Below, piece after piece: positions 141 to 21,968 of a stretch of 21,968 nucleotides of DNA (the stretch's first letter is position 1; each line of letters starts with the position of its first letter). The notes beneath the pieces are model-generated. The model searched no databases, had not been told where the DNA came from, and was given only the letters and a program-made list of their open reading frames with translations. This DNA comes from Octopus sinensis. Lineage: Eukaryota. Location of the stretch: contig NW_021823568.1 of NCBI RefSeq assembly GCF_006345805.1, forward strand, positions 1 to 21,968, in the 5' to 3' direction. Both the position numbers and the translations under genes were made by a program.

Positions 141-330
141 TATATACATATAACATATAATATAATATATAATATATATATATATAATATATATATATAT
201 ATATGCATATAATATATATATATATATTATATATACATATACATATACATACGTATATATATATGTCTGTGTGTGCGTGTGTGTGCGTGCGTGTGTGTAT
301 GCGTGTGTGTAGCGTGTGTGGTGTGTGCGT
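141..330. repeat. Compound microsatellite: (TA)n-like tract then (TG)n/(TGCG)n
   Basis: Read directly: TA-rich 141-264, TG/CG-rich 265-330. Confidence 0.95.
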
Positions 331-5544: not shown

Positions 5545-5650
5545 CTTGTGTGTGTGTGTGTGTGTGTGTGAGTGTCTGTGTGTGTGTGTGACTGTGTATG
5601 TATATGTGTGTGTGCGTGTGTGTGTGTGTGTATGCTTGTGTGTATGTGTG
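5545..5650. repeat. (TG)n microsatellite, interrupted
   Basis: Read directly. Confidence 0.95.
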
Positions 5651-6260
5651 TAATAGCTTTTAGCAGCAGCCCTCGGCCCCAACCTCTCACCCCAGTATGC
5701 TGCTGCTGTCCTAAGACCGGAGAAAAAATGGCGGGTGGGTGGAAGTTACAGTGCCTCAATTCCTTTCTTTATATGTGTTAATCCACGGTGTTGGCATCGT
5801 GGTAGTTTTGTTGTTGTTACTGTTGTCGTCGGCACCGCTGCTGCTGCTGCTGCTGACTGTGTTAATTGCATTATTAACACCATAAGGCCGTTCATGAGAT
5901 TTCATGTGTGTGTGTGTTTGTGTGTATGTATGCGTTTGTTTCGAATGTATCTATGCCCTTCATATTGATTTATATATTTACTTTATCTGCCTCTGTCTCT
6001 CATTTATCGCAGGTACGTGGCAGATATATTTAGACATTCGTTTATTTATCTATTCCATTCATCTGTTTTTTGCACCTGTCTCTATTTCTCATTCGTATCA
6101 CAGGTAAGTGCATATATGTCTATTGAGTGTATATTGCTCAGTACGTATCTGTGTATCATTTACGTTTCTTCCCTTCCCCTTTTGTCCCTTTCTCTCTCTC
6201 CTCCCATTTTATCCTTTTCTCGTTTTCCTTCCTCTCTCTTCACATCCCTACTGTCTTTAG

Positions 6261-7089: not shown

Positions 7090-7995
7090 AGTTATTTAGA
7101 GGCCATGGGTTTGGAGAAATGAGAGTGAAGGATCTGAACTTTACTGTTCTTCGTTTCTAGCCAGAGTTCAGTATCTAAAACAGGTAATCTATAGTTAGGA
7201 TGCTTACTAGAGCAGTCTATCGTTATTTCTATACTCTGATGCATGGAGTTAGTTATTTGCTGGATGCTCTCCACAATGTTAGCTTCTAGATCATCAACGT
7301 TGTCTAGATCATCAGCATTGTTGATATCATCCCCGTAGCGGGAGTACATGATTATACTTATGGAGTTCTCTGCTAATTTCTCTTTAAGCCTCATATCCCA
7401 CCATAAATAGGTTAGCCACATCGACAGCGATACTGACACTGATGGCTGCACCTTCCTCTTGGGTGTATATCTTGTTACCAAACTTAAATATATGGCTCTT
7501 GAGTGTGGTCTTGGTAATTGCACCGACCGCATGCGTGACCAACTTTTTTCCCTGATAATTTTCGGTGGTCCGTATACCTCTGGCCCAACCGTTCTATCTC
7601 ACTTTGGGAGTCTTCTTGGCCATAGAAGTTATAGTGTTGGGGTCTATGTCTTATCGACCTAGTGGGGCAGAAACAACTAAGGTCATGGTCATCTATGTAC
7701 TCATTGTCGCATGCTAGTCTCAGGCCTAGTTCTTCTGTGTCAACACCACAGAACTCCACATCGCTCTAACTGATTCCCTCCACACATTTCTTCACAGCAA
7801 AATTCAACATCAATGGATGGGTATAAGGGACTGTACGCCCATACTGCCTATTATACATGCTGTCAGATCATGGGCATGGTTGCTCACATTGATTCTGATG
7901 AGGAGGTCATCTGTGCTGTCACACACATCTGGGGGCATTTTTATCAGGGTGTGAGAAGTTGGGGCTGAAGGTAAGGCCACGCTGCGGCTAAAAGC
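7090..7995 (-). pseudogene. PLE reverse transcriptase core, frameshifted
   Basis: Pieces in ORFs 7810-8007, 7484-7759 and 7092-7532, plus an unlisted frame with the Q..G motif; YSRYGDD catalytic motif variant. Confidence 0.88.
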
Positions 7996-8002
7996 TATGA
8001 AA

Positions 8003-8070
8003 CACACACATACACACGCGCGCGATCACATACACACACACACAAGGACACAAACGCTTACACACACAAA
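8003..8070. repeat. (CA)n-rich tract at the PLE 5' junction
   Basis: Read directly. Confidence 0.85.
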
Positions 8071-8125
8071 GATAAACACCTTAGAAGGAGAGTGAGTGGA
8101 GCAAGAAAACACACGGAAACGAAAA

Positions 8126-8165
8126 GTCGCTGAAGAGGTCACAGATGTGTGACGAAAGATTTCCG
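8126..8165 (+). ncRNA. Hammerhead-like core, second copy
   Basis: CTGAAGA 8130-8136; stem II GTCACA/TGTGAC 8138-8153; GAAA 8154-8157; quasi-palindromic AGATTT then C. Stem I is weak. Confidence 0.45.
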
Positions 8166-8243
8166 TAGAATGGACAGGCATTAAAATAATAAAATAACAG
8201 TAATAAATGAGTAAAGAAAAGAGATGACTTACGTTCATATATT

Positions 8244-8295
8244 GAATGGCGGTGCCCCAGCATGGCCACAGCTCGTGAGCTGAAACTAGATAAAA
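8244..8295 (+). mobile_element. 3' tail fragment of a SINE/LINE family nested in the right arm
   Basis: GAATGGCGGTGCCCCAGCATGGCCACAGC...GCTGAAAC followed by an A/TA tail; absent from the left arm. Resemblance to a cephalopod SINE tail is from memory only. Confidence 0.6.
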
Positions 8296-8806
8296 TATAA
8301 TATATATATATATAGTGCGTGTGTTTATTTGGTAACAATAAATAAATAAATAAATAAATAAATAGATAAATAAACATGGCCATCCCGAAGTACAACAATA
8401 AATATATTCTTTTATATCTATAAATAATTCCACATGGTTCGCTTGTTTCAATGGAGTTCGACCACTCAAACGAATTTACAGGCATGATGGTAGTGAATTC
8501 TAGTAGCTGTTCCTTGCACATATCACTGAAAAGAATCGAGAACGTTGGGTGCTAAATTCGATATCATGATATCAAATTAACTGATATTCTTCATGCATCC
8601 TTGGCAGAGGTAAGACGTTATTTATGTTCCCTGTTTTTCTCTATCATGCTTGTCTTAGTGATTCTCCTGTGGCTTAGAAATATTTTTACTTCTATTTTTA
8701 GTGAAGCAGGCGCTTATGCAGTGCCCTAGTATATATATATATATATTCTTGTGTATGTGTATTTTGTTTCATATTTATATTTGCATTTTTATAATTGTAC
8801 TTTATA

Positions 8807-8934: not shown

Positions 8935-9247
8935 CCATTTTATGTGTATTATTCTTATGGTATTGATATATCTTACATATTGATATATATTGATTTGTTG
9001 CATTTGGATGTTCCTATTTATGTAGTTAATAAATAATTTGAATTGGTAATATCTGGAAGTTGATGATTGAAATGAATCTGTTCCTCCATTTTCTTATTTG
9101 TATTATATCTTCTTATATATATTCTTATATGTATTATATATAATTATTAATTTGTCTATATTGCTTTACACTTGCGGGCGCCAACGTTATTATTATCAAA
9201 ATTTATATCGTGCTTTTATATTTATAATTAATTTCACATGGTTCTTT

Positions 9248-12200
9248 TATAGGCGCAGGTGTGGCTGTGTAGTATAGGCGCAGGAGTGACTATGTGGTAT
9301 AGGCGCAGGAGTGGCTGTGTGGTATAGGCGCAGGAGTGGCTGTGTGGTATAGGCGCAGGAGTGACTATGTGGCATAGGCGCGGGAGTGGCTGTGTAGTAT
9401 AGGCGCAGGAGTGGCTGTGTGGTATAGGCGCAGGAGTGACTATGTGGCATAGGCGCGGGAGTGGCTGTGTAGTATAGGCGCGGGAGTGGCTGTGTAGTAT
9501 AGGCGCAGGAGTGGCTGTGTGGTATAGGCGCAGGAGTGACTATGTGGCATAGGCGCGGGAGTGGCTGTGTAGTATAAGCGCAGGAGTGGCTGTGTGGTAT
9601 AGGCGCAGGAGTGACTATGTGGCATAGGCGCGGGAGTGACTATGTGGCATAGGCGCAGGAGTGGCTGTGTGGTATAGGCGCAGGAGTGACTATGTGGCAT
9701 AGCGCGGGAGTGGCTGTGTAGTATAGGCGCAGGAGTGGCTGTGTGGTATAGGCGCAGGAGTGACTATGTGGCATAGGCGCGGGAGTGGCTGTGTAGTATA
9801 GGCGCGGGAGTGGCTGTGTAGTATAGGCGCAGGAGTGGCTGTGTGGTATAGGCGCAGGAGTGACTATGTGGCATAGGCGCGGAGTGGCTGTGTAGTATAA
9901 GCGCAGGAGTGGCTGTGTGGTATAGGCGCGGGAGTGACTATGTGGCATAGGCGCGGGAGTGACTATGTGGCATAGGCGCAGGAGTGGCTGTGTGGTATAG
10001 GCGCAGGAGTGACTATGTGGCATAGGCGCGGGAGTGGCTGTGTAGTATAGGCGCGGGAGTGGCTGTGTAGTATAGGCGCAGGAGTGGCTGTGTGGTATAG
10101 GCGCAGGAGTGACTATGTGGCATAGGCGCGGGAGTGGCTGTGTAGTATAGGCGCGGGAGTGGCTGTGTAGTATAGGCGCAGGAGTGACTATGTGGCATAG
10201 GCGCGGGAGTGGCTGTGTAGTATAGGCGCAGGAGTGGCTGTGTGGTATAGGCGCAGGAGTGACTATGTGGCATAGGCGCGGGAGTGGCTGTGTAGTATAG
10301 GCGCAGGAGTGGCTGTGTGGTATAGGCGCGGGAGTGCCTATGTGGCATAGGCGCAGGAGTGACTATGTGGCATAGGCGCGGGAGTGGCTGTGTAGTATAG
10401 GCGCAGGTGTGGCTGTGTGGTATAGGCGCGGGAGTGACTATGTGGCATAGGCGCAGGAGTGACTATGTGGCATAGGCGCGGGAGTGGCTGTGTAGTATAG
10501 GCGCAGGTGTGGCTGTGTGGTATAGGCGCGGGAGTGACTATGTGGCATAGGCGCAGGAGTGACTATGTGGCATAGGCGCGGGAGTGGCTGTGTAGTATAG
10601 GCGCAGGAGTGGCTGTGTGGTATAGGCGCAGGAGTGACTATGTGGCATAGGCGCAGGAGTGACTATGTGGCATAGGCGCGGGAGTGGCTGTGTAGTATAG
10701 GCGCAGGAGTGGCTGTGTGGTATAGGCGCAGGAGTGACTATGTGGCATAGGCGCGGGAGTGGCTGTGTAGTATAGGCGCAGGAGTGGCTGTGTGGTTTAT
10801 AGGCGCAGGAGTGACTATGTGGCATAGGCGCGGAGTGACTATGTGGCATAGGCGCGGGAGTGGCTGTGTAGTATAAGCGCAGGAGTGGCTGTGTGGTATA
10901 GGCGCAGGAGTGACTATGTGGCATAGGCGCGGAGTGGCTTTGTAGTTAGGCGCAGGAGTGACTATGTGGCATAGGCGCGGGTGACTATGTGGCATAGGCG
11001 CGGGAGTGGCTGTGTAGTATAAGCGCAGGAGTGACTATGTGGCATAGGCGCGGGAGTGGCTGTGTAGTATAGGCGCGGGAGTGACTATGTGGCATAGGCG
11101 CAGGAGTGGCTGTGTAGTATAGGCGCGGGAGTGACTATGTGGCATAGGCGCAGGAGTGGCTGTGTAGTATAGGCGCAGGAGTGACTATGTGGCATAGGCG
11201 CGGGAGTGGCTGTGTAGTATAGGCGCAGGAGTGGCTGTGTGGTATAGGCGCAGGAGTGACTATGTGGCATAGGCGCAGGAGTGACTATGTGGCATAGGCG
11301 CAGGAGTGGCTGTGTAGTATAGGCGCAGGAGTGGCTGTGTAGTATAGGCGCAGGAGTGACTATGTGGCATAGGCGCAGGAGTGGCTGTGTAGTATAGGCG
11401 CGGGAGTGGACTATGTGGCATAGGCGCAGGAGTGGCTGTGTAGTATAGGCGCGGGAGTGACTATGTGGCATAGGCGCAGGAGTGGCTGTGTAGTATAGGC
11501 GCAGGAGTGACTATGTGGCATAGGCGCGGGAGTGACTATGTGGCATAGGCGCGGGAGTGGCTGTGTGTAGTATAAGCGCAGGAGTGACTATGTGGCATAG
11601 GCGCGGGAGTGGCTGTGTAGTATAGGCGCGGGAGTGACTATGTGGCATAGGCGCAGGAGTGGCTGTGTAGTATAGGCGCGGGAGTGACTATGTGGCATAG
11701 GCGCAGGAGTGGCTGTGTAGTATAGGCGCAGGAGTGACTATGTGGCATAGGCGCGGGAGTGACTATGTGGCATAGGCGCGGGAGTGGCTGTGTAGTATAA
11801 GCGCAGGAGTGGCTGTGTGGTATAGGCGCAGGAGTGACTATGTGGCATAGGCGCAGGAGTGACTATGTGGCATAGGCGCAGGAGTGGCTGTGTAGTATAG
11901 GCGCAGGAGTGGCTGTGTAGTATAGGCGCAGGAGTGACTATGTGGCATAGGCGCAGGAGTGGCTGTGTAGTATAGGCGCGGGAGTGACTATGTGGCATAG
12001 GCGCAGGAGTGGCTGTGTAGTATAGGCGCGGGAGTGACTATGTGGCATAGGCGCAGGAGTGGCTGTGTAGTATAGGCGCAGGAGTGACTATGTGGCATAG
12101 GCGCGGGAGTGACTATGTGGCATAGGCGCGGGAGTGGCTGTGTAGTATAAGCGCAGGAGTGACTATGTGGCATAGGCGCGGGAGTGGCTGTGTAGTATAG

Positions 12201-15200
12201 GCGCGGGAGTGACTATGTGGCATAGGCGCAGGAGTGGCTGTGTAGTATAGGCGCGGGAGTGACTATGTGGCATAGGCGCAGGAGTGGCTGTGTAGTATAG
12301 GCGCAGGAGTGACTATGTGGCATAGGCGCGGGAGTGACTATGTGGCATAGGCGCGGAGTGGCTGTGTGTAGTATAAGCGCAGGAGTGACTATGTGGCATA
12401 GGCGCGGGAGTGGCTGTGTGGTATAGGCGCGGGAGTGGCTGTGTGGTATAGGCGCAGGAGTGACTATGTGGCATAGGCGCGGGAGTGGCTGTGTAGTATA
12501 GGCGCGGGAGTGACTATGTGGCATAGGCGCAGGAGTGGCTGTGTAGTATAGGCGCGGGAGTGACTATGTGGCATAGGCGCAGGAGTGGCTGTGTAGTATA
12601 GGCGGCGGGAGTGACTATGTGGCATAGGCGCAGGAGTGGCTGTGTAGTATAGGCGCAGGAGTGACTATGTGGCATAGGCGCGGGAGTGACTATGTGGCAT
12701 AGGCGCGGGAGTGGCTGTGTAGTATAAGCGCAGGAGTGACTATGTGGCATAGGCGCGGGAGTGGCTGTGTAGTATAGGCGCGGGAGTGACTATGTGGCAT
12801 AGGCGCAGGAGTGGCTGGTAGTATAGGCGCGGGAGTGACTATGTGGCATAGGCGCAGGAGTGGCTGTGTAGTATAGGCGCAGGAGTGACTATGTGGCATA
12901 GGCGCGGGAGTGGCTGTGTAGTATAGGCGCAGGAGTGGCTGTGTGGTATAGGCGCAGGAGTGACTATGTGGCATAGGCGCAGGAGTGACTATGTGGCATA
13001 GGCGCAGGAGTGGCTGTGTAGTATAGGCGCAGGAGTGACTATGTGGCATAGGCGCGGGAGTGACTATGTGGCATAGGCGCAGGAGTTGGCTGTGTAGTAT
13101 AGGCGCAGGAGTGACTATGTGGCATAGGCGCGGGAGTGGCTGTGTAGTATAAGGCGCAGGAGTGGCTGTGTTGTATAGGCGCAGGAGTGGCTGTGTGTAT
13201 AGGCGCAGGAGTGACTATGTGGCATAGGCGCGGGAGTGGCTGTGTAGTAAGGCGCAGGTGTGGCTGTGGTAGTATAGGCGCAGAGTGAGTGACTATGTTG
13301 CATGGCGCAGGAGTGGCTGTGTAGTATAGGCGCGGGAGTGGCTGTGTAGTATAGGCGCAGGAGTGACTATGTTGTATAGGCGCAGGAGTGGCTGTGTAGT
13401 ATATGCGCCGAGTGGACTATGTGGCATAGGCGCGGGAGTGGCTGTGTAGTATAGGCGCAGGTGTGGCTGTGTAGTATAGGCGCGGAGTGACTATGTGGTA
13501 TAGGCGCGGGAGTGGCTGGGTATGGTATAGGCGCAGGAGTGACTATGTGGCATAGGCCGCGGGAGTGGCTGTGTGGTTATAGCGCAGGAGTGACTATGTG
13601 GTATAGGCGCGCGGAGTGGCTGTTATAATAGGCGCAGGAGTGGACTATGTGGTATAGGCGCGGGAGTGGCTGTGTGGTATAGGCGCAGGAGTGACTATGT
13701 GGTATGGGCGCGGAGTGGCTGTGTGTGGTATAGGCGCAGGAGGACTATGTGCATAGGCGCGGGAGTGGCTGTGTGTATAGGCGCAGGAGTGACTATGTGT
13801 ATAGGCGCGGGAGTGGCTGTGTGGTATAGGCGCAGGAGTGACTATGTGGCATAGGCGCGGGAGTGGCTGTGTGGTATAGGCGCAGGAGTGACTATGTGGT
13901 ATAGGCGAGGGAGTGGCTGTGTGGTATAGGCGGCAGGAGTGACTATGTGGCATAGGCGCGGGAGTGGCTGTGTGGTATAGGCGCAGGAGTGACTATGTGG
14001 TATAGGCGCGGGGGTGGCTGTGTGGTATAGGCGCGGGAGTGCTGTGTGGTATAGGCGCAGGAGTGACTATGTGGCATAGGCGCGGGAGTGGCTGTGTGGT
14101 ATAGGCGCAGGAGTGACTATGTGGTATAGGCGCGGGAGTGGCTGTGTGGTATAGGCGCAGGAGTGACTATGTGGCATAGGCGCGGGAGTGGCTGTGTGGT
14201 ATAGGCGCAGGAGTGACTATGTGGTATAGGCGCGGGAGTGGCTGTGTGGTATAGGCGCGGGAGTGGCGTGTGGTATAGGCGCAGGAGTGACTATGTGGTA
14301 TAGGCGCGGGAGTGGCTGTGTTTATAGGCGCAGGAGTGACAATGTTGGTATAGGCGCGGGAGTGGCTGTGTTGTATAGGCGCAGGAGTGACTATGTGGTA
14401 TAGGCGCGGGAGTGGCTGTGTAGTATAGGCGCAGGAGTGACTATGTGGTATAGGCGCGGGAGTGGCTGTGTGGTATAGGCGCAGGAGTGACTATGTGGCA
14501 TAGGCGCAGGAGTGGCTGTGTAGTATAGGCGCAGGAGTGACTATGTGGTATAGGCGCGGGAGTGGCTGTGTGGTATAGGCGCAGGAGTGACTATGTGGTA
14601 TAGGCGCGGGAGTGGCTGTGTGGTATAGGCGCAGGAGTGACTATGTGGTATAGGCGCGGGAGTGGCTGTGTGGTATAGGCGCAGGAGTGACTATGTGGTA
14701 TAGGCGCGGGAGTGGCTGTGGGGTATAGGCGCAGGAGTGACTATGTGGTATAGGCGCGGGAGTGGCTGTGTGGTATAGGCGCAGGAGTGACTATGTGTAT
14801 AGGCGCGGGAGTGGCTGTGTAGTATAGGCGCAGGAGTGACTATGTGGTATAGGCGCGGGAGTGACTATGTGGCATAGGCGCGGGAGTGGCTGTGTAGTAT
14901 AGGCGCAGGAGTGACTATGTGGCATAGGCGCAGGAGTGGCTGTGTGGTATAGGCGCAGGAGTGACTATGTGGCATAGGCGCGGGAGTGGCTGTGTGGTAT
15001 AGGCGCAGGAGTGACTATGTGGCATAGGCGCGGGAGTGGCTGTGTAGTATAGGCGCAGGAGTGACTATGTGGCATAGGCGCGGGAGTGACTATGTGGCAT
15101 AGGCGCGGGAGTGGCTGTGTAGTATAGCCGCAGGAGTGACTATGTGGCATAGGCGCAGGAGTGGCTGTGTAGTATAGGCGCAGGAGTGACTATGTGGCAT

Positions 15201-16202
15201 AGGCGCAGGAGTGGCTGTGTAGTATAGGCGCAGGAGTGGCTGTGTGGCATAGGCGCGGGAGTGGCTGTGTGGTATAGGCGCAGGAGTGACTATGTGGTAT
15301 AGGCGCGGGAGTGGCTGTGTGGTATAGGCGCGGGAGTGGCTGTGTGGTATAGGCGCAGGAGTGACTATGTGGTATAGGCGCGGGAGTGGCTGTGTGGTAT
15401 AGGCGCAGGAGTGACTATGTGGTATAGGCGCGGGAGTGGCTGTGTGGTATAGGCGCAGGAGTGACTATGTGGTAATACGCGGGAGTGGCTGTGTAGTATA
15501 GGCGCAGGAGTGACTATGTGGTATAGGCGCGGGAGTGACTATGTGGCATAGGCGCGGGAGTGGCTGTGTGGTATAGGCGCAGGAGTGACTATGTGGCATA
15601 GGCGCAGGAGTGGCTGTGTGGTATAGGCGCAGGAGTGACTATGTGGCATAGGCGCGGGAGTGGCTGTGTAGTATAGGCGCAGGAGTGACTATGTGGCATA
15701 GGCGCGGGAGTGACTATGTGGCATAGGCGCGGGAGTGGCTGTGTAGTATAGGCGCAGGAGTGACTATGTGGCATAGGCGCGGGAGTGACTATGTGGCATA
15801 GGCGCAGGAGTGGCTGTGTAGTATAGGCGCGGGAGTGACTATGTGGCATAGGCGCAGGAGTGGCTGTGTAGTATAGGCGCAGGAGTGACTATGTGGCATA
15901 GGCGCAGGAGTGGCTGTGTAGTTATAGGCGCGGGAGTGACTATGTGGCATAGGCGCAGGAGTGGCTGTGTAGTATAGGCGCAGGAGTGACTTGTGGCATA
16001 GGCGCGGGAGTGGCTGTGTAGTATAGGCGCAGGAGGGCTGTGTAGTATAGGCGCAGAGTGGCTGTGTAGTATAGGCGCAGGAGTGACTATGTGGCATAGG
16101 CGCAGGAGGTGGCTGTGTGGTAGTATAGGCGCAGGAGTGGCTGTGTGGCATAGCGCGGGAGTGGCTGTGTGGTATATAGGCGCAGGAGCGGCTATGTGGT
16201 AT
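9248..16202 (+). repeat. ~7 kb minisatellite of 25-bp units (about 278 copies), derived from a SINE head
   Basis: Units AGGCGC(A/G)GGAGTG(A/G)CT(A/G)TGT(A/G)G(C/T)AT; the 25-aa periodicity of the spurious ORFs equals 3 x 25 bp. Copy number estimated as length/25. Confidence 0.98.
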
Positions 16203-16405
16203 AGGCGAAGAAGTAGGTGTGCGGTAAGTAGCTTGATTACCAACCACATGGTTCCGGCTTCAGTCTTACTGCTTTGCACCTTAGGCACACACACAACACA
16301 AGGACACACACGCATACACACACAAAGATAAACACTTTTTATAGCCACGGGCCACCAAAGCCTTGTGAGTGGATTTGATTGGCGGAAACTGAAGGAAGCA
16401 CGTCG
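16201..16405 (+). mobile_element. tRNA-derived SINE, degenerate, with an internal ~48-bp insertion and (TA)n tail
   Basis: The head resembles one array unit and continues GTAAGTAGCTTGATTACCAACCACATGGTTCCGGCTTCAGTC (degenerate B box ~16257-16267, about 45 nt after the A-box-like motif). Body CCAAAGCCTTGTGAGTGGATTTG...GGAAACTGAAGGAAGC matches an abundant Octopus SINE as I recall it (unverified). Confidence 0.8.
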
Positions 16406-16442
16406 TATATATGTATATATATATATATTAATATATAGTATA

Positions 16443-16493
<51 letters not shown>

Positions 16494-16496
16494 GTT

Positions 16497-16560
<64 letters not shown>

Positions 16561-16588
16561 CAAATATATATATATATATATATATACG
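16405..16588. repeat. (TA)n microsatellite
   Basis: Read directly. Confidence 0.95.
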
Positions 16589-17291: not shown

Positions 17292-17335
<44 letters not shown>

Positions 17336-17460
17336 GCAGGAGACATTGAGAGCCATTCTAAGCATTCTCGTATAACAATCATCCAACTGCTTCTTCAATG
17401 CTTTAGGGAGCACCCATATTTCAGCCCCGTATAGAAGAGAAGATTCCACTGTTGCCACTG
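17336..17460 (-). mobile_element. RTE-clade LINE ORF2 fragment embedded in (TA)n
   Basis: Encodes VATVESSLLYGAEIWVLPKALKKQLDDCYTRMLRMALNVS, matching the LLYGxETW...RMLR post-RT motif of RTE-like elements. (TA)n on both sides (17293-17335, 17461-17558). Confidence 0.85.
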
Positions 17461-17502
<42 letters not shown>

Positions 17503-17520
17503 CTATATATATATATATAT

Positions 17521-17554
<34 letters not shown>

Positions 17555-17559
17555 TATAA

Positions 17560-19125
17560 TATTGTTAATAATTATTGTTAATTAGCCTTAGGATTAAATT
17601 AAATAACGTTTAATATTGTGTTAATATTGTTAATAATTATTGTTAATTAGCCTTAAGATTAAATTAAATAACGTTTAATATTGTTAATATTGTTAATAAT
17701 TATTGTTAATTAGCCTTAGGATTAATTAATAAATTACGTTTAATATTGTTAATAATAATGATTGTTAATTAGCCTTAAGATTAAATTAAATAACGTTTAA
17801 TATGTTAATAATTTTTCAGATACTCTATCTTCTAATTAGCCTTAAGATTAAATTAAATAACGTTTAATATTAATAACGTCTAATTAGCCTTAGGATTAAA
17901 TTAAATAACGTTTAATATTGTTTAATATTGTTAATAATTACTGTTAATTAGCCTTAAGATTAAATTAAATAACGTTTAATATTGTTTAATATTGTTAATA
18001 ATTATTGTTAATTAGCCTTAAGATTAAATTAAATAACGTTTAATATTGTTTTAATATTGTTAATAATTCTTCAGATACTCTATCTTCTAATTAGCCTTAA
18101 GATTAAATTAAATAACGTTTAATATTACCCACACTCTAATATAATATTAACATTGCTAATATATTTTCAGATATAGGATTAAATTAAATAACGTTTAATA
18201 TTGTTTAATATTGTTAATAATTACTGTTAATTAGCCTTAAGATTAAATTAAATAACGTTAATATTGTTTAATATTGTTAATAATTATTGTTAATTAGCTT
18301 AGGATTAAATTAAATAACGTTTAATATTGTTAATATTGTTAATAATTATTGTTAATTAGCCTTAAGATTAAATTAAATAACGTTTAATATTGTTTAATAT
18401 TGTTAATAATTCTTCAGATACTCTATCTTCTAATTAGCCTTAAGATTAAATTAATAACGTTTAATATTACCCACACTCTAATATAATATTAACATTGCTA
18501 ATATATTTTCAGATACTCTATCTCCTAATTAGCCTTAAGATTAAAAACGTTTTTACCCACACTCTAATATAATATTAATATTGCTAATATATTTTCAGAT
18601 GCTCTATCTTCTAATTAGCCTTAAGATTAAATTAAATAACGTTTAATATAAAACGTCTAATTAGCCTTAAGATTAAATTAAATAACGGTTAATATTGCTT
18701 AATATTGTATATATAATTTTTCAGATACTCTGTCTTCTAATTAGCCTTAAGATTAAATTAAATAACGTTTAATATTACCCACACTCTAATATAATATTAA
18801 TATTGCTAATATATTTTCAGATACTCTATCTCCAAATCAGCCTTAGATTAAATAACGTTTTTTTTTTTTTTACCCACACTCTAATATAATATTAATATGC
18901 TAATATATTTTCAGATACTCTATCTCCTAATTAGCCTTAAGATTAAATAACCGTTTTTATCCACACTCTAATATAATATTAATATTGCTAATACATTTTC
19001 AGATACTCTATCCCCTAATTAGCCTTAAGATTAAATAACGTTTTTACCCAAAAAACGTTTTTACACAAACTTTAATATTGTTAATATTTCTTTTTCAAGT
19101 ACTCTATCTTCTAATTAGCCTTAAT
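17560..19125. repeat. AT-rich satellite, about 21 monomers of ~45-95 bp
   Basis: Recurrent core TAATTAGCCTTAAGATTAAATTAAATAACGTTT; left monomers ~64 bp, right monomers ~86-95 bp. Confidence 0.95.
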
Positions 19126-19185: not shown

Positions 19186-20126
19186 ATGTCCAGAGCATGG
19201 AGACCTGACGAGCTGGATTTATTCGTACAAGCATGGGAGTGCGCCGGCGGAGATAGCCCTAGCGAGGTGATTGCGGCTGCGCTGAAGAGCAGAGGCTACA
19301 AGAGGACAGCGGCTCAGATGGAGCGAAAGAGACGGGAATTCGTGCGCTCATATGCGCTTGTACGGTCGCACATTGGCGCACTTGATGCCATCTTTGAGAA
19401 TGAGCGGGGCAAAGATGGCAAGAATTGAGACGATGAAAGAAGTCACCCCCACCTGGTGGACGCCCGGGAGGAGGTTTTGAATGAGAAACCTGCCCGGGAA
19501 GTGAACCCAGGTGCAAGTTCTCCAACCGGCAGCAAGGGCCATGGAGACGGAGAACCCGGTGAAGAGGTAGAGGGAGGAAGAAGAACTAAAAGAAGGACTG
19601 GAAGAGCTAAAGGAAAAGAAAAAGCTCAAGCAGGACCAAAGAGTGAAACAACCAGGAAATAGAAGTGGAACGCAAAGGATGGAACCAAACAGCGCACACG
19701 GGTGTGTATGTTCTACCTGAGAGGTTCCTGCTGGCATGGAAAGGAAGGTGCAGGCTGCCGCTTTGCACATCGGGGACCCTGCCACAGAGACACGAGGCAG
19801 ATGGACAAACCATCAACAACGCAAAGAAAAGGGAGGGACACGCAACACCTGCCCCAAAGCGGAGGTACGCAGATGTTGTGCGCGCCACAAACAGCCAACA
19901 TGATGTTGTCGAAAGAGCAGCTGCTGAGCAACAATCTTTTTTGCGCATGGCACAAAAGATTGTACAGCAGCTGACTGGCTTCATCAAACCCAAGCCCGCA
20001 GGTGGGACTACCCTATATACCAGACCACCACAGCAAACAGGACACAGGATGGACACCGCCCGGCAACAACGTACACCTCACCTCGATACTCCTACTGAAC
20101 ATCAGAGGACTGCAAACACTCAGTAA
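19186..20126 (+). pseudogene. LINE-B ORF1: Myb/SANT-like N-terminus, charged linker, CCCH finger, C-terminal region
   Basis: ORFs starting 19186, 19456 and 19702 share one frame, split by stops at 19426-28 and 19660-62. Finger CMFYLRGSCWHGKEGAGCRFAH at 19705-19770. A probable frameshift leads to the RRYADVV...QQSFLRMAQKIVQQL frame ending 20126. Confidence 0.75.
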
Positions 20127-21968
20127 CAGGACAAAGATCCCGTTCCTGAGAGACTTTGTTGCATGCAATCAAGCCTTATGCATAGCACTTACAGAAAAGG
20201 CACCTGAAACCGGACATAGCAGATGCGGAGTTACACATACCACAGTATGCTGTACTACGGACCGACAGGAAAGAAGGAGTCATGGAGGTGTGCTATGTAC
20301 ATCCGTGAGGACCTCACACCCCAGGTCCTCTGTCATACTCAAACTCGGTGTGTGACACACTAATGTACATATTAGGCAACTTGATGTAGTTGTGTGTGCT
20401 ACATATCGCCCTCCAGATGCCCCAAGCCATGTGGGCAAGTTTGAAGACTGCCTTATAAAAATAGAAGAAATTCTAACCACATTAGAACAACACATAGGTG
20501 TGCTTCTTATGGGAGACTTCAATCTGCCCAATGTCAGATGGCCCGAGGGCCTTTCTCTCCCAGGAATGACAAGATGTGAACGAGGACAGGCGAGGTCCCT
20601 CCTGAACCTCATCAACACCCTGTACATGGAGCAGGTAATACTCCAACCAACCAGGGCAGGTAACACACTGGATCTCTGCTTCACAAATGACATGGATCTC
20701 ATCCATAATGTGAAAGTGACACCGACACTACTCTCGGATCACAACATGATAGAGCTGACCATGTACGGGCCAAAAGAGAAAAGAGAGCACGGACATGCAG
20801 CCTACAAGAAACCCTCAAAATCTTTCCAGCTTGAACTACCATAAGGCAAACTGGAAACAAATTGAGAAAGAGATCCTCAAACAAAACTGGCCTAAATGTC
20901 TCTCCTCGCCAGACATCGACGTGAAACTTCAACAATTCATGTCTGTAATGCAAGCCATATGCTACAAATGTGTCCCAGAGAGAAAGGCCACTGTACACAA
21001 GAACAAAATCCCCAGAGAGAGGAAAATTTTAATGAGACGGCGTACGAAATTTTCAAATCGCCTAAACAAACAGATTGAAAGCAGTGAAAAGTCCCGCCTA
21101 AAAATAAAACTGTTGGAAATCGAAAAATGTCTGCAACTCTCCCATGAAAAAGAAAGAGCAGACAAAGAAGCTGGGTATGCCAAAGAAAACAGCTACAGTG
21201 CACTGTAGAATAGGGCCACTCCTCGAAAAGGATGGCACACTACAGGAAAACCAATGAGGGTAAGTGAAATACTGAATGAGCAATTCAAGAGTGTTTTCAC
21301 TCCACCCTTGGGCATCTCCAAATCACCAATCCAACTGACTTTTTTACCACTGCAGATATAAAATCAGAGGCGGCGACGATAGATTACATCGATATAAAGG
21401 AAGACGATGTAACCAAGGCTATAGATGAAATGAAAACAGACTCAGCTACTGGCCCCGATGGATTCCCGGCAATCCTCCTAAAAGCATGTAAGAGAGTCCT
21501 AGCAAGACCACTGCAGTCCTCTTTCAGAGCTTCTTGCAGCTGGCAAACTTCCAGGAAACTGAAGGAAGGTAAAATATGCCCCATTCATAAAGGAGGTAGC
21601 AGAGCGGAAGCCAAGAACTATAGACCTATCTCTCTGACCTCACACATCAGCAAGGTCATGGAACGAATAGTCAGAAGGAAGCTGATCACCTTCCTTGAAG
21701 CGAATGACTTGCTACCGACACCCAACATGGTTTCCGACAGGGAGAAGCTGTTTAACTCAGCTCCTACAACACTATGACTGGGTGCTGAAACGGCTGCTCA
21801 ACCACTCAAATGTGGAAGTGATATATCTCGACATTGCAAAGGCCTTTGATAAAGTCGATCATGGAATGATATGTCACAACTACGTGATCTCAACATAGTT
21901 GGAAAACTGGGAGAATGGCTTCATGACTTTCTGAGGATAGAAGTCAGGTGGTAGTAGCCAATGGGGCC
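20080..21968 (+). pseudogene. LINE-B ORF2 (APE + RT N-half), multiple indels
   Basis: LLLNIRGL, IALTE, SHGGV, TYRPP, GDFNLPNVRW, PTRAGNTLDLCFTN, SDHNMI; GPDGFPAILLK, NYRPISLTSHISKVMER, GRSCLTQLL, YLDIAKAFDKVDH. Confidence 0.95.

What the first reader, a model, noticed from the sequence alone, without database searches (positions are those of the whole stretch)
9248..16405. 7-kb satellite built from the Pol III A-box head of a SINE, still attached to the SINE body
Seen: the last unit (ATAGGCGAAGAAGTAGGTGTGCGGTA) runs without a break into a SINE body with a B-box-like motif. G-type units contain TGGCTGTGTGG, a 10/11 match to the A-box consensus TRGCNNARYGG. The array is therefore the first ~25 nt of the SINE amplified about 278 times. 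Established: tRNA SINEs use internal A/B boxes bound by TFIIIC, and TE-derived satellites exist. Inference: hundreds of A-boxes upstream of one degenerate B-box could give staggered Pol III starts, a TFIIIC/insulator platform or a long repetitive RNA. The SINE head may be a recurrent seed for minisatellites in this lineage.
Basis: partly seen in the sequence, partly recalled or inferred. Interest (0 to 1): 0.85.

Follow-up and report, generated by a model that had tools for sequence, protein, structure and literature searches.

The report
Octopus minisatellite born from SINE head
A 7-kb run of about 279 copies of a 25-base unit in an octopus-type genome is the first ~23 bases of a common short mobile element (SINE) copied over and over next to its parent copy; this kind of repeat birth is already known from reptiles, and nothing here shows that the run has a function.

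Summary
TRF finds one 25-bp array at 9248-16226 with 279 copies. Its last, most diverged unit (16201-16226) runs without a break into about 180 bp of SINE body (16227-16405).

In a 20.6-kb Octopus sinensis locus, the two best matches to the unit on either strand are exactly the 5' heads of two dispersed single-head SINE copies (19/23 and 20/23). The unit is SINE nt 1-23 plus a 2-nt TA linker.

The array behaves like an ordinary evolving minisatellite:
- seven unit types that differ only by transitions;
- alternating types;
- a block of about 23 units (575 bp) that recurs several times;
- decayed units next to the SINE.

The attached SINE is a wreck. Its B box is down to 7/11, a 52-nt CA-rich patch replaces 12 nt, its internal (TA)n has expanded, and its 3' half is gone.

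Only 53 units carry the 10/11 A-box match, and no unit has a B box. A TFIIIC or Pol III role is therefore unsupported and unlikely.

The closest known kind is the SINE-derived satellites of squamates (Vassetzky 2023). I file this as a new member of that kind, of modest interest. I could not test whether other loci carry the same array.

The parts
9248..16226 (+). 25-bp minisatellite of about 279 units. Each unit is SINE nt 1-23 (GGCGCAGGAGTGGCTGTGTGGTA) plus a TA linker. Seven major unit types differ only by transitions.
   Evidence: TRF; unit census; pattern scan, 256 matches against 0.01 expected; homology to SINE heads.
10981..13000 (+). Higher-order domain in which a block of about 23 units (~575 bp) recurs several times.
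   Evidence: Exact runs of 198-228 bp at lags 553-578, 1128 and 1704; identical units enriched at lag 23, z=6.4; unit-type string.
13351..13900 (+). Internal patch of irregular units with many indels. Either an old array core or low assembly quality.
   Evidence: Only 8 of 20 units are exact major types; mean edit distance 1.21.
15924..16226 (+). Decayed proximal units next to the SINE. The terminal unit 16201-16226 matches the G-type 23-mer at 18/23.
   Evidence: Mean edit distance 1.0, against about 0.1 at the left edge; sequence; 18/23.
16227..16405 (+). SINE body fragment: the rest of the head plus the conserved central domain, ending at the family's internal TA/TG microsatellite. The 3' half is missing.
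   Evidence: Alignments A1 and A3 with O. sinensis and Argonauta copies; blastn and nhmmer; no match to the 3' half.
16250..16266 (+). Degenerate B-box-like site. GGCTTCAGTCT is 7/11 against GGTTCGANNCC; the O. sinensis copy L045a has AGTTCAGTCCC at 9/11.
   Evidence: Read from the sequence.
16287..16338 (+). CA-rich 52-nt patch (X') that replaces AGTGTCTTCTAC of the SINE. It is 92% identical to window 8032-8082. Its end, together with the next base, forms the first T5 run (16336-16340) after the array.
   Evidence: blastn; alignments; T-run scan.
16406..16586 (.). (TA)92 expansion of the SINE's internal microsatellite. SINE homology ends here.
   Evidence: TRF; alignment.
9213..9244 (+). Left flank segment Y', 29/32 identical to 8409-8440. 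It ends 3 nt before the first unit.
   Evidence: blastn E=2e-7 and local alignment.
7950..8374 (+). Context: a second, strongly decayed SINE-like copy 'U' in the same orientation. It has a single head remnant, the CA-rich X patch (8032-8082), a 3' tail (8245-8295) and an (AATA)n run.
   Evidence: nhmmer tail hit E=0.02; alignment A3; sequence.

Best explanation
This is a SINE-derived minisatellite. A tRNA-like SINE that is common in octopods inserted here. Afterwards, a 25-nt segment covering the element's first 23 nt (the 5' acceptor-like strand plus the A-box region) and 2 nt of adjoining sequence was duplicated in place; the segment is bounded by TA...TA microhomology.

The duplicate then expanded to about 279 copies by unequal sister-chromatid or homologue exchange, replication slippage and gene conversion. 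These are the usual engine of G-rich minisatellites. The interior stayed homogenised and acquired a dimer-like alternation of two unit types and a block of about 23 units. The units beside the parent SINE and the SINE itself decayed.

Shown: the array, its continuity with the SINE body, the homology of the unit to heads of dispersed copies, the higher-order structure, and the decay of the parent copy.

Inferred: that the first duplication happened in place after insertion, the exchange mechanism, and that the array is a neutral by-product without a Pol III or TFIIIC role.
For: Array.

Octopod origin of the window: the LINE RT ORF's best named relative is an Octopus sinensis protein, whose locus L045 was fetched.

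Unit = SINE head. In L045 (20.6 kb) the two best matches to the 23-nt unit on either strand are the 5' ends of its two dispersed SINE copies. L045a matches the A-type unit at 20/23 and L045b matches the G-type unit at 19/23; the binomial P for 18/23 or better at a fixed site is 1e-7. Both copies have one head only.

Continuity with the SINE body and central domain, which is also conserved in Argonauta hians.

Non-SINE linker: the 4 nt before GGCG are TATA here, but TTCCT and TAAA in the two O. sinensis copies.

Minisatellite dynamics:
- adjacent identical units are depleted (5.2% against 9.6%);
- lags 2, 4 and 23 are enriched;
- exact runs over 200 bp occur at lags 575, 1128 and 1704;
- units are decayed only at the SINE side and in one internal patch.

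Same architecture in the literature: squamate SINE-derived satellites have a longer terminal unit that runs into the SINE, alternating subvariants, and up to about 1000 units (PMC10702118).

TE-rich, non-coding context: Pfam RVT_1 and Exo_endo_phos_2 fragments on both sides.
Against: The SINE 5' end rests on only three independent copies. A second, decayed SINE-like copy 0.9 kb upstream is also preceded by TTTTAT. The TA/TATA linker could therefore be a subfamily leader or part of a local duplication rather than private flank.

No target-site duplication could be found, because the 3' half of the SINE is missing.

I could not show that this is the only locus, so the array might have been born elsewhere.

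Lack of function is an argument from promoter rules, not a measurement.

Array length and the indel-rich patch depend on an assembly I cannot check.
Confidence: 0.75

Rival explanations
1. One reading: the array is a working platform of A boxes that, with the downstream B box, gives staggered Pol III starts, recruits TFIIIC as an insulator, or yields a long repetitive RNA.
For: Each unit derives from the A-box region, and 53 units match TRGCNNARYGG at 10/11. Neither strand of the array has a run of four or more T, so a polymerase that started there would not meet a Pol III terminator before 16336. The + strand RNA would be highly structured, at -53 kcal/mol per 150 nt.
Against: No unit has a B box, which is the high-affinity TFIIIC site (established knowledge of type 2 promoters and of ETC/COC sites). 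The only B-box-like site is 7/11. Only the last one to three units lie within a normal A-B distance, and these are the most decayed, with 9/11 A boxes. About 80% of units have further A-box mismatches. The tRNA models do not recognise the head. The parent SINE is disrupted by a 52-nt patch and lacks its 3' half.
Confidence: 0.04
2. The array was not born at this locus. It belongs to a multi-locus SINE-head satellite family, or to a SINE variant that carries a variable number of head repeats. It reached this place by segmental duplication or retroposition and then grew.
For: Squamate SINE-derived satellites occur at tens to thousands of loci per genome (PMC10702118). The neighbourhood shows local duplications: a 32-nt segment at the left array edge and a 52-nt patch in the SINE body both have copies 0.8-8 kb upstream. 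The two unit types mirror two head variants of dispersed copies.
Against: Both dispersed O. sinensis copies have a single head. No other 25-mer array was found in about 60 kb of octopod DNA, in the rest of the window, or in the protein database via array ORFs. A 7-kb array cannot be part of a Pol III SINE transcript of normal size.
Confidence: 0.12
3. The array is real, but its length and fine structure are assembly artefacts: collapsed or over-expanded long-read consensus.
For: About 35 units are 23, 24, 26 or 27 nt long, and a patch at 13351-13900 is full of indels. Such errors are typical of uncorrected long reads.
Against: Ordered higher-order blocks and exact runs over 200 bp at specific lags are not what consensus noise gives. 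Both edges are anchored in unique sequence.
Confidence: 0.07
4. Chance juxtaposition: an unrelated G-rich minisatellite that happens to abut a 5'-truncated SINE.
For: G-rich 10-60-bp minisatellites are common. The unit contains GCAGGAG, reminiscent of classical minisatellite cores (from memory only).
Against: The unit matches the heads of independent dispersed SINE copies at 19-20 of 23 positions, exactly where the body alignment predicts, and the array is in phase with the parent head.
Confidence: 0.01

Closest known systems
SINE-derived satellites (sSat1/2/3) of squamate reptiles (Vassetzky, Kosushkin & Ryskov 2023, PMC10702118)
   Same: Tandem arrays whose unit is a portion of a tRNA-related SINE. 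A longer terminal unit continues into the SINE. Two or three locus-specific subvariants alternate. Arrays reach several hundred to about 1000 units. Longer arrays are more homogeneous.
   Different: Units there are 67-215 nt and usually include the B box, body or LINE-derived region. Here the unit is only 25 nt and is confined to the extreme 5' end (A-box region). The host is a cephalopod mollusc, not a reptile. Multi-locus and subtelomeric distribution is shown there and was not testable here.
Classical G-rich hypervariable minisatellites (vertebrates)
   Same: Unit of 10-60 bp, kilobase-scale array, strong G/C strand asymmetry, interspersed variant units, and growth by unequal exchange or conversion (what it works like).
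   Different: Those generally have no traceable mobile-element parent. Instability and polymorphism were not measured here.
Tandem-like SINE multimers in bivalves and other TE-derived tandem repeats (PMC11481361; reviews cited in PMC10702118)
   Same: Mollusc SINEs give rise to tandem structures through recombination. This fits the general principle that TE fragments seed satellites.
   Different: The bivalve cases are tandems of whole or nearly whole SINEs (2-15 units, sometimes with target-site duplications between them), not hundreds of copies of a 25-nt head piece.
tRNA-related tandem families of amphibians (PolIII/TAN, OAX, Rana/polIII, Hy/polIII; summarised in PMC10702118)
   Same: Tandem repeats that contain Pol III promoter-like, tRNA-related sequence.
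   Different: Units are 200-360 nt, include both boxes in some cases, and have no demonstrated SINE parent. Here the SINE parent is attached and the unit lacks a B box.
TFIIIC-only sites (yeast ETC, fission-yeast COC) and tRNA-gene insulators
   Different: These sites are defined by B boxes. The array has only A-box-derived sequence, so the defining feature is absent.

Membership tests
SINE-derived satellite (sSat type) | Head-to-tail tandem array of many units | tested here: met
   279 units of 25 bp; all on one strand.
SINE-derived satellite (sSat type) | Unit homologous to a portion of a dispersed SINE family | tested here: met
   19/23 and 20/23 identity to the heads of two dispersed O. 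sinensis copies. These are the best matches in 20.6 kb on both strands.
SINE-derived satellite (sSat type) | Terminal unit extends into the remaining SINE sequence | tested here: met
   The unit at 16201-16226 continues into about 180 bp of SINE body. The SINE's own 3' terminus is missing.
SINE-derived satellite (sSat type) | Several loci per genome, often subtelomeric | not testable with these tools
   No searchable octopod genome was available. Only about 60 kb of other octopod DNA could be fetched, and it held no second array.
tRNA-derived SINE (type 2 Pol III promoter) | A box and B box at tRNA-like spacing | tested here: inconclusive
   The A-box-like site is 10/11 in the consensus unit. 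The B-box-like site is 9/11 in L045a and 7/11 in the window copy, about 35-40 nt downstream. Motifs this degenerate are not significant on their own.
tRNA-derived SINE (type 2 Pol III promoter) | Head recognisable as tRNA-like (cloverleaf or tRNA model) | tested here: inconclusive
   Rfam gave no tRNA hit even at E<=10. ARAGORN found nothing at default settings. It called a cloverleaf starting at GGCG only at 70% of the normal threshold, a level at which 9-18% of shuffled sequences are also called.
tRNA-derived SINE (type 2 Pol III promoter) | Dispersed copies with a LINE-type 3' tail | tested here: met
   Independent copies occur in O. sinensis (two) and Argonauta, plus a decayed one in the window. 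L045a ends in an A-rich (AAAAGAAT)-like tail. Target-site duplications were not identified.
Minisatellite | Unit of 10-100 bp, array of 0.5-30 kb, variant units interspersed | tested here: met
   25 bp, 6.98 kb, seven major variants in ordered patterns.
TFIIIC platform (ETC/COC-like) | B box in each bound site | tested here: not met
   The units contain no B-box-like sequence. The only such site is at 16250-16266 and is degenerate.

The most novel reading that the evidence does not exclude
Octopod genomes repeatedly turn the 5' head of their most abundant SINE into G-rich 25-mer arrays at many loci. That would make a lineage-wide satellite family of A-box-derived units that is bound by Pol III factors or condensin, or transcribed into structured G/U-rich RNA. 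It would extend SINE-derived satellites from reptiles to molluscs and give them a chromatin role.
Probability: 0.04. Interest if true: 0.7.

Novelty: new member of a known kind. Interest (0 to 1): 0.3.

Why it matters
This locus catches satellite birth from a mobile element with the parent still attached: the donor, the duplicated segment and its 2-nt microhomology can all be read directly. The only systematic description of SINE-derived satellites is in squamates, whose authors left open whether the phenomenon exists elsewhere. A cephalopod example, with a much shorter 5'-terminal unit, suggests the process is general wherever SINEs are very abundant; in Octopus vulgaris they make up about 11.6% of the genome (PMC13282606). 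In practice, such arrays will be mis-annotated as SINE or 'simple repeat', and they inflate SINE counts. The finding does not, as it stands, bear on Pol III biology.

Tried and rejected
1. Searching for other arrays through their spurious ORFs. The array/junction ORF (169 aa) gave no hit at E<=0.001 among 5.8 billion proteins.

2. Scanning metagenome and GTDB contigs with an 18-mer of the unit. The 43 hits were all single chance matches, and none carried SINE body sequence.

3. IMG/VR scans with body, unit-junction and central-domain patterns. These gave one chance hit and then nothing.

4. A back-translated antisense SINE consensus recalled from memory, used as a protein query. It returned one hit, an Argonauta hians 'hypothetical protein' that is a translated SINE. 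That was useful for conservation of the body but not for the head.

5. Other LINE-protein loci (ENA contig L047, Logan contigs L048-L050). None held a SINE of this family.

6. Full-text search for SINE or unit sequence strings in papers. No hits. No paper in the library describes an octopus SINE-head array. Albertin 2015 is not held.

7. tRNA detection with Rfam and ARAGORN. Negative or at noise level.

8. Target-site duplication search for the array-linked SINE. None found.

9. The idea that CACATGGTTC beside the array is a SINE remnant. Rejected: it belongs to a 32-nt segment duplicated from 8409-8440, and its match to the SINE body is at chance level for the window (E about 1.8).

10. A G3-type quadruplex motif. 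None found; only two-tetrad GG motifs are present.
Full report
**What is there**

TRF finds one dominant feature in the window: a 25-bp array at 9248-16226 with 279.1 copies, 84% matches and consensus TATAGGCGCAGGAGTGGCTGTGTGG. It is G-rich on the + strand (GC about 0.58, GC skew about +0.52). A degenerate 21-mer of the unit matches 256 times, always on the + strand and always inside the array, against 0.01 expected.

Splitting the array at its anchors gives seven major unit types that together make up most units. They are combinations of four transition polymorphisms: CAGG/CGGG, GGCTGTG/GACTATG, TGG/TAG and T/C before ATAGG.

The left edge is sharp (...CACATGGTTCTTT|TATAGGCG). On the right, the last unit (16201-16226, ATAGGCGAAGAAGTAGGTGTGCGGTA) runs straight into AGTAGCTTGATTACCAACCACATGGTTCCGGCTTCAGTC....

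**Whose genome, and what is the adjoining sequence**

The flanks are LINE debris. Pfam finds RVT_1 and Exo_endo_phos_2 fragments on both sides. The best named relative of the RT ORF at 1365-1946 is an Octopus sinensis protein. Its chromosomal locus (L045, 20.6 kb) contains two dispersed copies of the element that follows the array:

- L045a (1589-1975) is a full-length copy of about 390 bp.
- L045b (9590-9745) is a second copy found by nhmmer at E=4e-12.

The window sequence 16227-16405 aligns with them from the head through the conserved central part (...AAAGCCTTGTGAGTGGAT..ACGGAAACTGAA..CGTCGTATATATG). The same central domain occurs in Argonauta hians, where it has even been annotated as a protein.

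This is therefore a dispersed octopod SINE. SINEs make up about 11.6% of the O. vulgaris genome (PMC13282606). Three tRNA-derived octopus SINE families have been known since Ohshima & Okada 1994 (cited in PMC4758252). I could not assign this one to a named family.

**Is the unit the SINE head?**

Yes. Anchored by the body alignment, the heads compare as follows:

| Sequence | Head |
|---|---|
| Array unit | GGCGCAGGAGTGGCTGTGTGGTA |
| Window junction | GGCGAAGAAGTAGGTGTGCGGTA-AGTAGC |
| L045a | (T)GCACAGGAGTGCCTATGTGGCA-AGTAGC |
| L045b | GGTGCAGACATGGCTGTGTGGTA-AGAAGC |

As an unbiased control I slid the 23-mer over all of L045 on both strands. The two best matches are exactly these two SINE 5' ends:

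| Copy | A-type unit | G-type unit |
|---|---|---|
| L045a | 20/23 | 18/23 |
| L045b | 16/23 | 19/23 |

The binomial P for 18/23 or better at a fixed site is about 1e-7.

The four bases upstream of GGCG differ between copies: TATA here, TTCCT and TAAA in O. sinensis. The unit is therefore SINE nt 1-23 plus a 2-nt linker (TA) that equals the bases just 5' of the head. The duplicated 25-mer is bounded by TA...TA.

I read this as a first duplication that happened in place after insertion. There is a caveat. A second decayed SINE-like copy in the window is also preceded by TTTTAT, so a subfamily leader or a local duplication cannot be excluded.

**How the array behaves**

- Adjacent units are identical less often than chance (5.2% against 9.6%).
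- Units two or four apart are identical more often than chance (z = 4.6 and 7.8).
- There is a further peak at 23 units (z = 6.4).
- Exact runs of 198-228 bp recur at lags 553-578, 1128 and 1704 within 10981-13000. With seven interspersed unit types, this means that a block of about 575 bp was itself duplicated several times.
- Units are near-perfect at the left edge (mean edit distance 0.1). They are decayed in the last ten units beside the SINE (1.0) and in a patch at 13351-13900 (1.2).

This is the pattern of a minisatellite that grows and homogenises by unequal exchange and conversion while its oldest end decays. It matches what Vassetzky et al. describe for SINE-derived satellites in squamates: a longer terminal unit that runs into the SINE, alternating subvariants, up to about 1000 units, and greater homogeneity in long arrays (PMC10702118).

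**State of the parent SINE**

The parent SINE is a ruin.

- Its B-box-like site is 7/11 (GGCTTCAGTCT).
- A 52-nt CA-rich patch (16287-16338) replaces 12 nt of the family sequence.
- The family's internal TA/TG microsatellite has grown to (TA)92 (16406-16586).
- Nothing after that matches the 3' half present in L045a.
- No target-site duplication can be found.

**The functional proposal**

The A-box match is real but modest. The exact 10/11 motif TGGCTGTGTGG is in 53 units. Another 78 units have TGGCTGTGTAG and 118 have TGACTATGTGG, both 9/11.

By the established rules of type 2 Pol III promoters, TFIIIC is anchored by the B box and reaches the A box over a limited distance, and TFIIIC-only sites (ETC, COC) are B-box sites. 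Here no unit has a B box, the single B-box-like site is degenerate, and the few units within range are the most decayed.

Neither Rfam's tRNA model (E<=10) nor ARAGORN at default settings sees a tRNA-like head. A cloverleaf starting at GGCG appears only at 70% of the normal threshold, where 9-18% of shuffled sequences also score.

Two points remain formally compatible with a long RNA. Neither strand of the array has a run of four or more T, so the first Pol III terminator lies at 16336. A + strand RNA would also fold strongly. That is permissive, not evidence. I put the platform idea at about 4%.

**What could not be tested**

I could not test whether the head is a recurrent seed. The tools gave no searchable octopod genome.

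- ORF-based, metagenome, GTDB and IMG/VR searches found no second array.
- The other octopod DNA I could fetch (about 60 kb) holds only single-head copies.
- No paper in the library reports such an array in cephalopods.

**Loose ends in the neighbourhood**

- A second, much more decayed SINE-like copy ('U', about 7950-8374, + strand) lies 0.9 kb left of the array.
- Its CA-rich segment 8032-8082 is 92% identical to the patch inside the array-linked SINE, although the rest of the two copies is only about 60% alike. That suggests a short conversion tract or a shared module.
- A 32-nt segment 35 nt after U's tail (8409-8440) recurs at 29/32 at 9213-9244, ending 3 nt before the first unit. These point to local duplication or repair events around the array edges, which I cannot resolve.
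- The two alternating unit types resemble the two head variants seen in L045a and L045b. This may mean that SINE subfamily states are represented in the array.

**Verdict**

The origin story is supported. The functional story is unsupported and unlikely. This is a new (mollusc, 25-nt, 5'-terminal) member of the known class of SINE-derived tandem repeats. It is of modest interest, chiefly as a clean snapshot of satellite birth from a SINE.

Noticed in passing
window 7950-8374 (+): A second, strongly decayed SINE-like copy 'U' in the same orientation, 0.9 kb left of the array. It has a head remnant (AGAAGTTGGGGCTGAAGGTAAG), central-domain remnants, a 3' tail at 8245-8295 that aligns to the O. 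sinensis SINE tail, and an (AATA)n run at 8337-8374. It has a single head and no array.
   Followed up: partly
window 8032-8082 vs 16287-16338: A 52-nt CA-rich segment is 92% identical between copy U and the array-linked SINE. It sits at the same relative position in both, while the rest of the two copies is only about 60% alike. It could be a short gene-conversion tract, a templated repair patch or a subfamily module.
   Followed up: partly
window 8409-8440 vs 9213-9244: A 32-nt direct repeat (29/32, E=2e-7), 804 bp apart. The second copy ends 3 nt before the first array unit. It might be a long target-site duplication of an unidentified 772-bp insert, or a local duplication. It also explains the CACATGGTTC 10-mer next to the array.
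   Followed up: partly
window 17557-19069: A very AT-rich (GC 0.16-0.20) complex tandem array with periods of 64, 86-95, 126 and 308 bp. It lies directly 5' of a + strand LINE with a Myb/SANT-like ORF (19186-19428), an endonuclease (20392-20844) and an RT (21430-21777). It may be a monomeric 5' UTR or promoter array of that LINE, or a separate satellite.
   Followed up: no
L046 10040-10172 (Argonauta hians, minus strand of the locus): An annotated 'hypothetical protein' (P0121, 99 aa) is an antisense translation of the SINE central domain. In this copy the head is replaced by a perfect 17-bp inverted repeat (CGCATCGGATTTGAAAC ... GTTTCAAATCCGATGCG).
   Followed up: no
L045 1588-1610 and 9593-9615 (O. 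sinensis): The two dispersed SINE heads each resemble a different one of the two alternating array unit types: A-type 20/23 for L045a and G-type 19/23 for L045b. This hints that the unit types mirror SINE head variants or subfamilies.
   Followed up: partly
window 141-330, 5547-5651, 16406-16586, 17292-17562: There are unusually many long dinucleotide microsatellites, (TA)n and (TG)n, in 22 kb. Two of them sit at positions where the SINE family carries an internal TA/TG seed.
   Followed up: no
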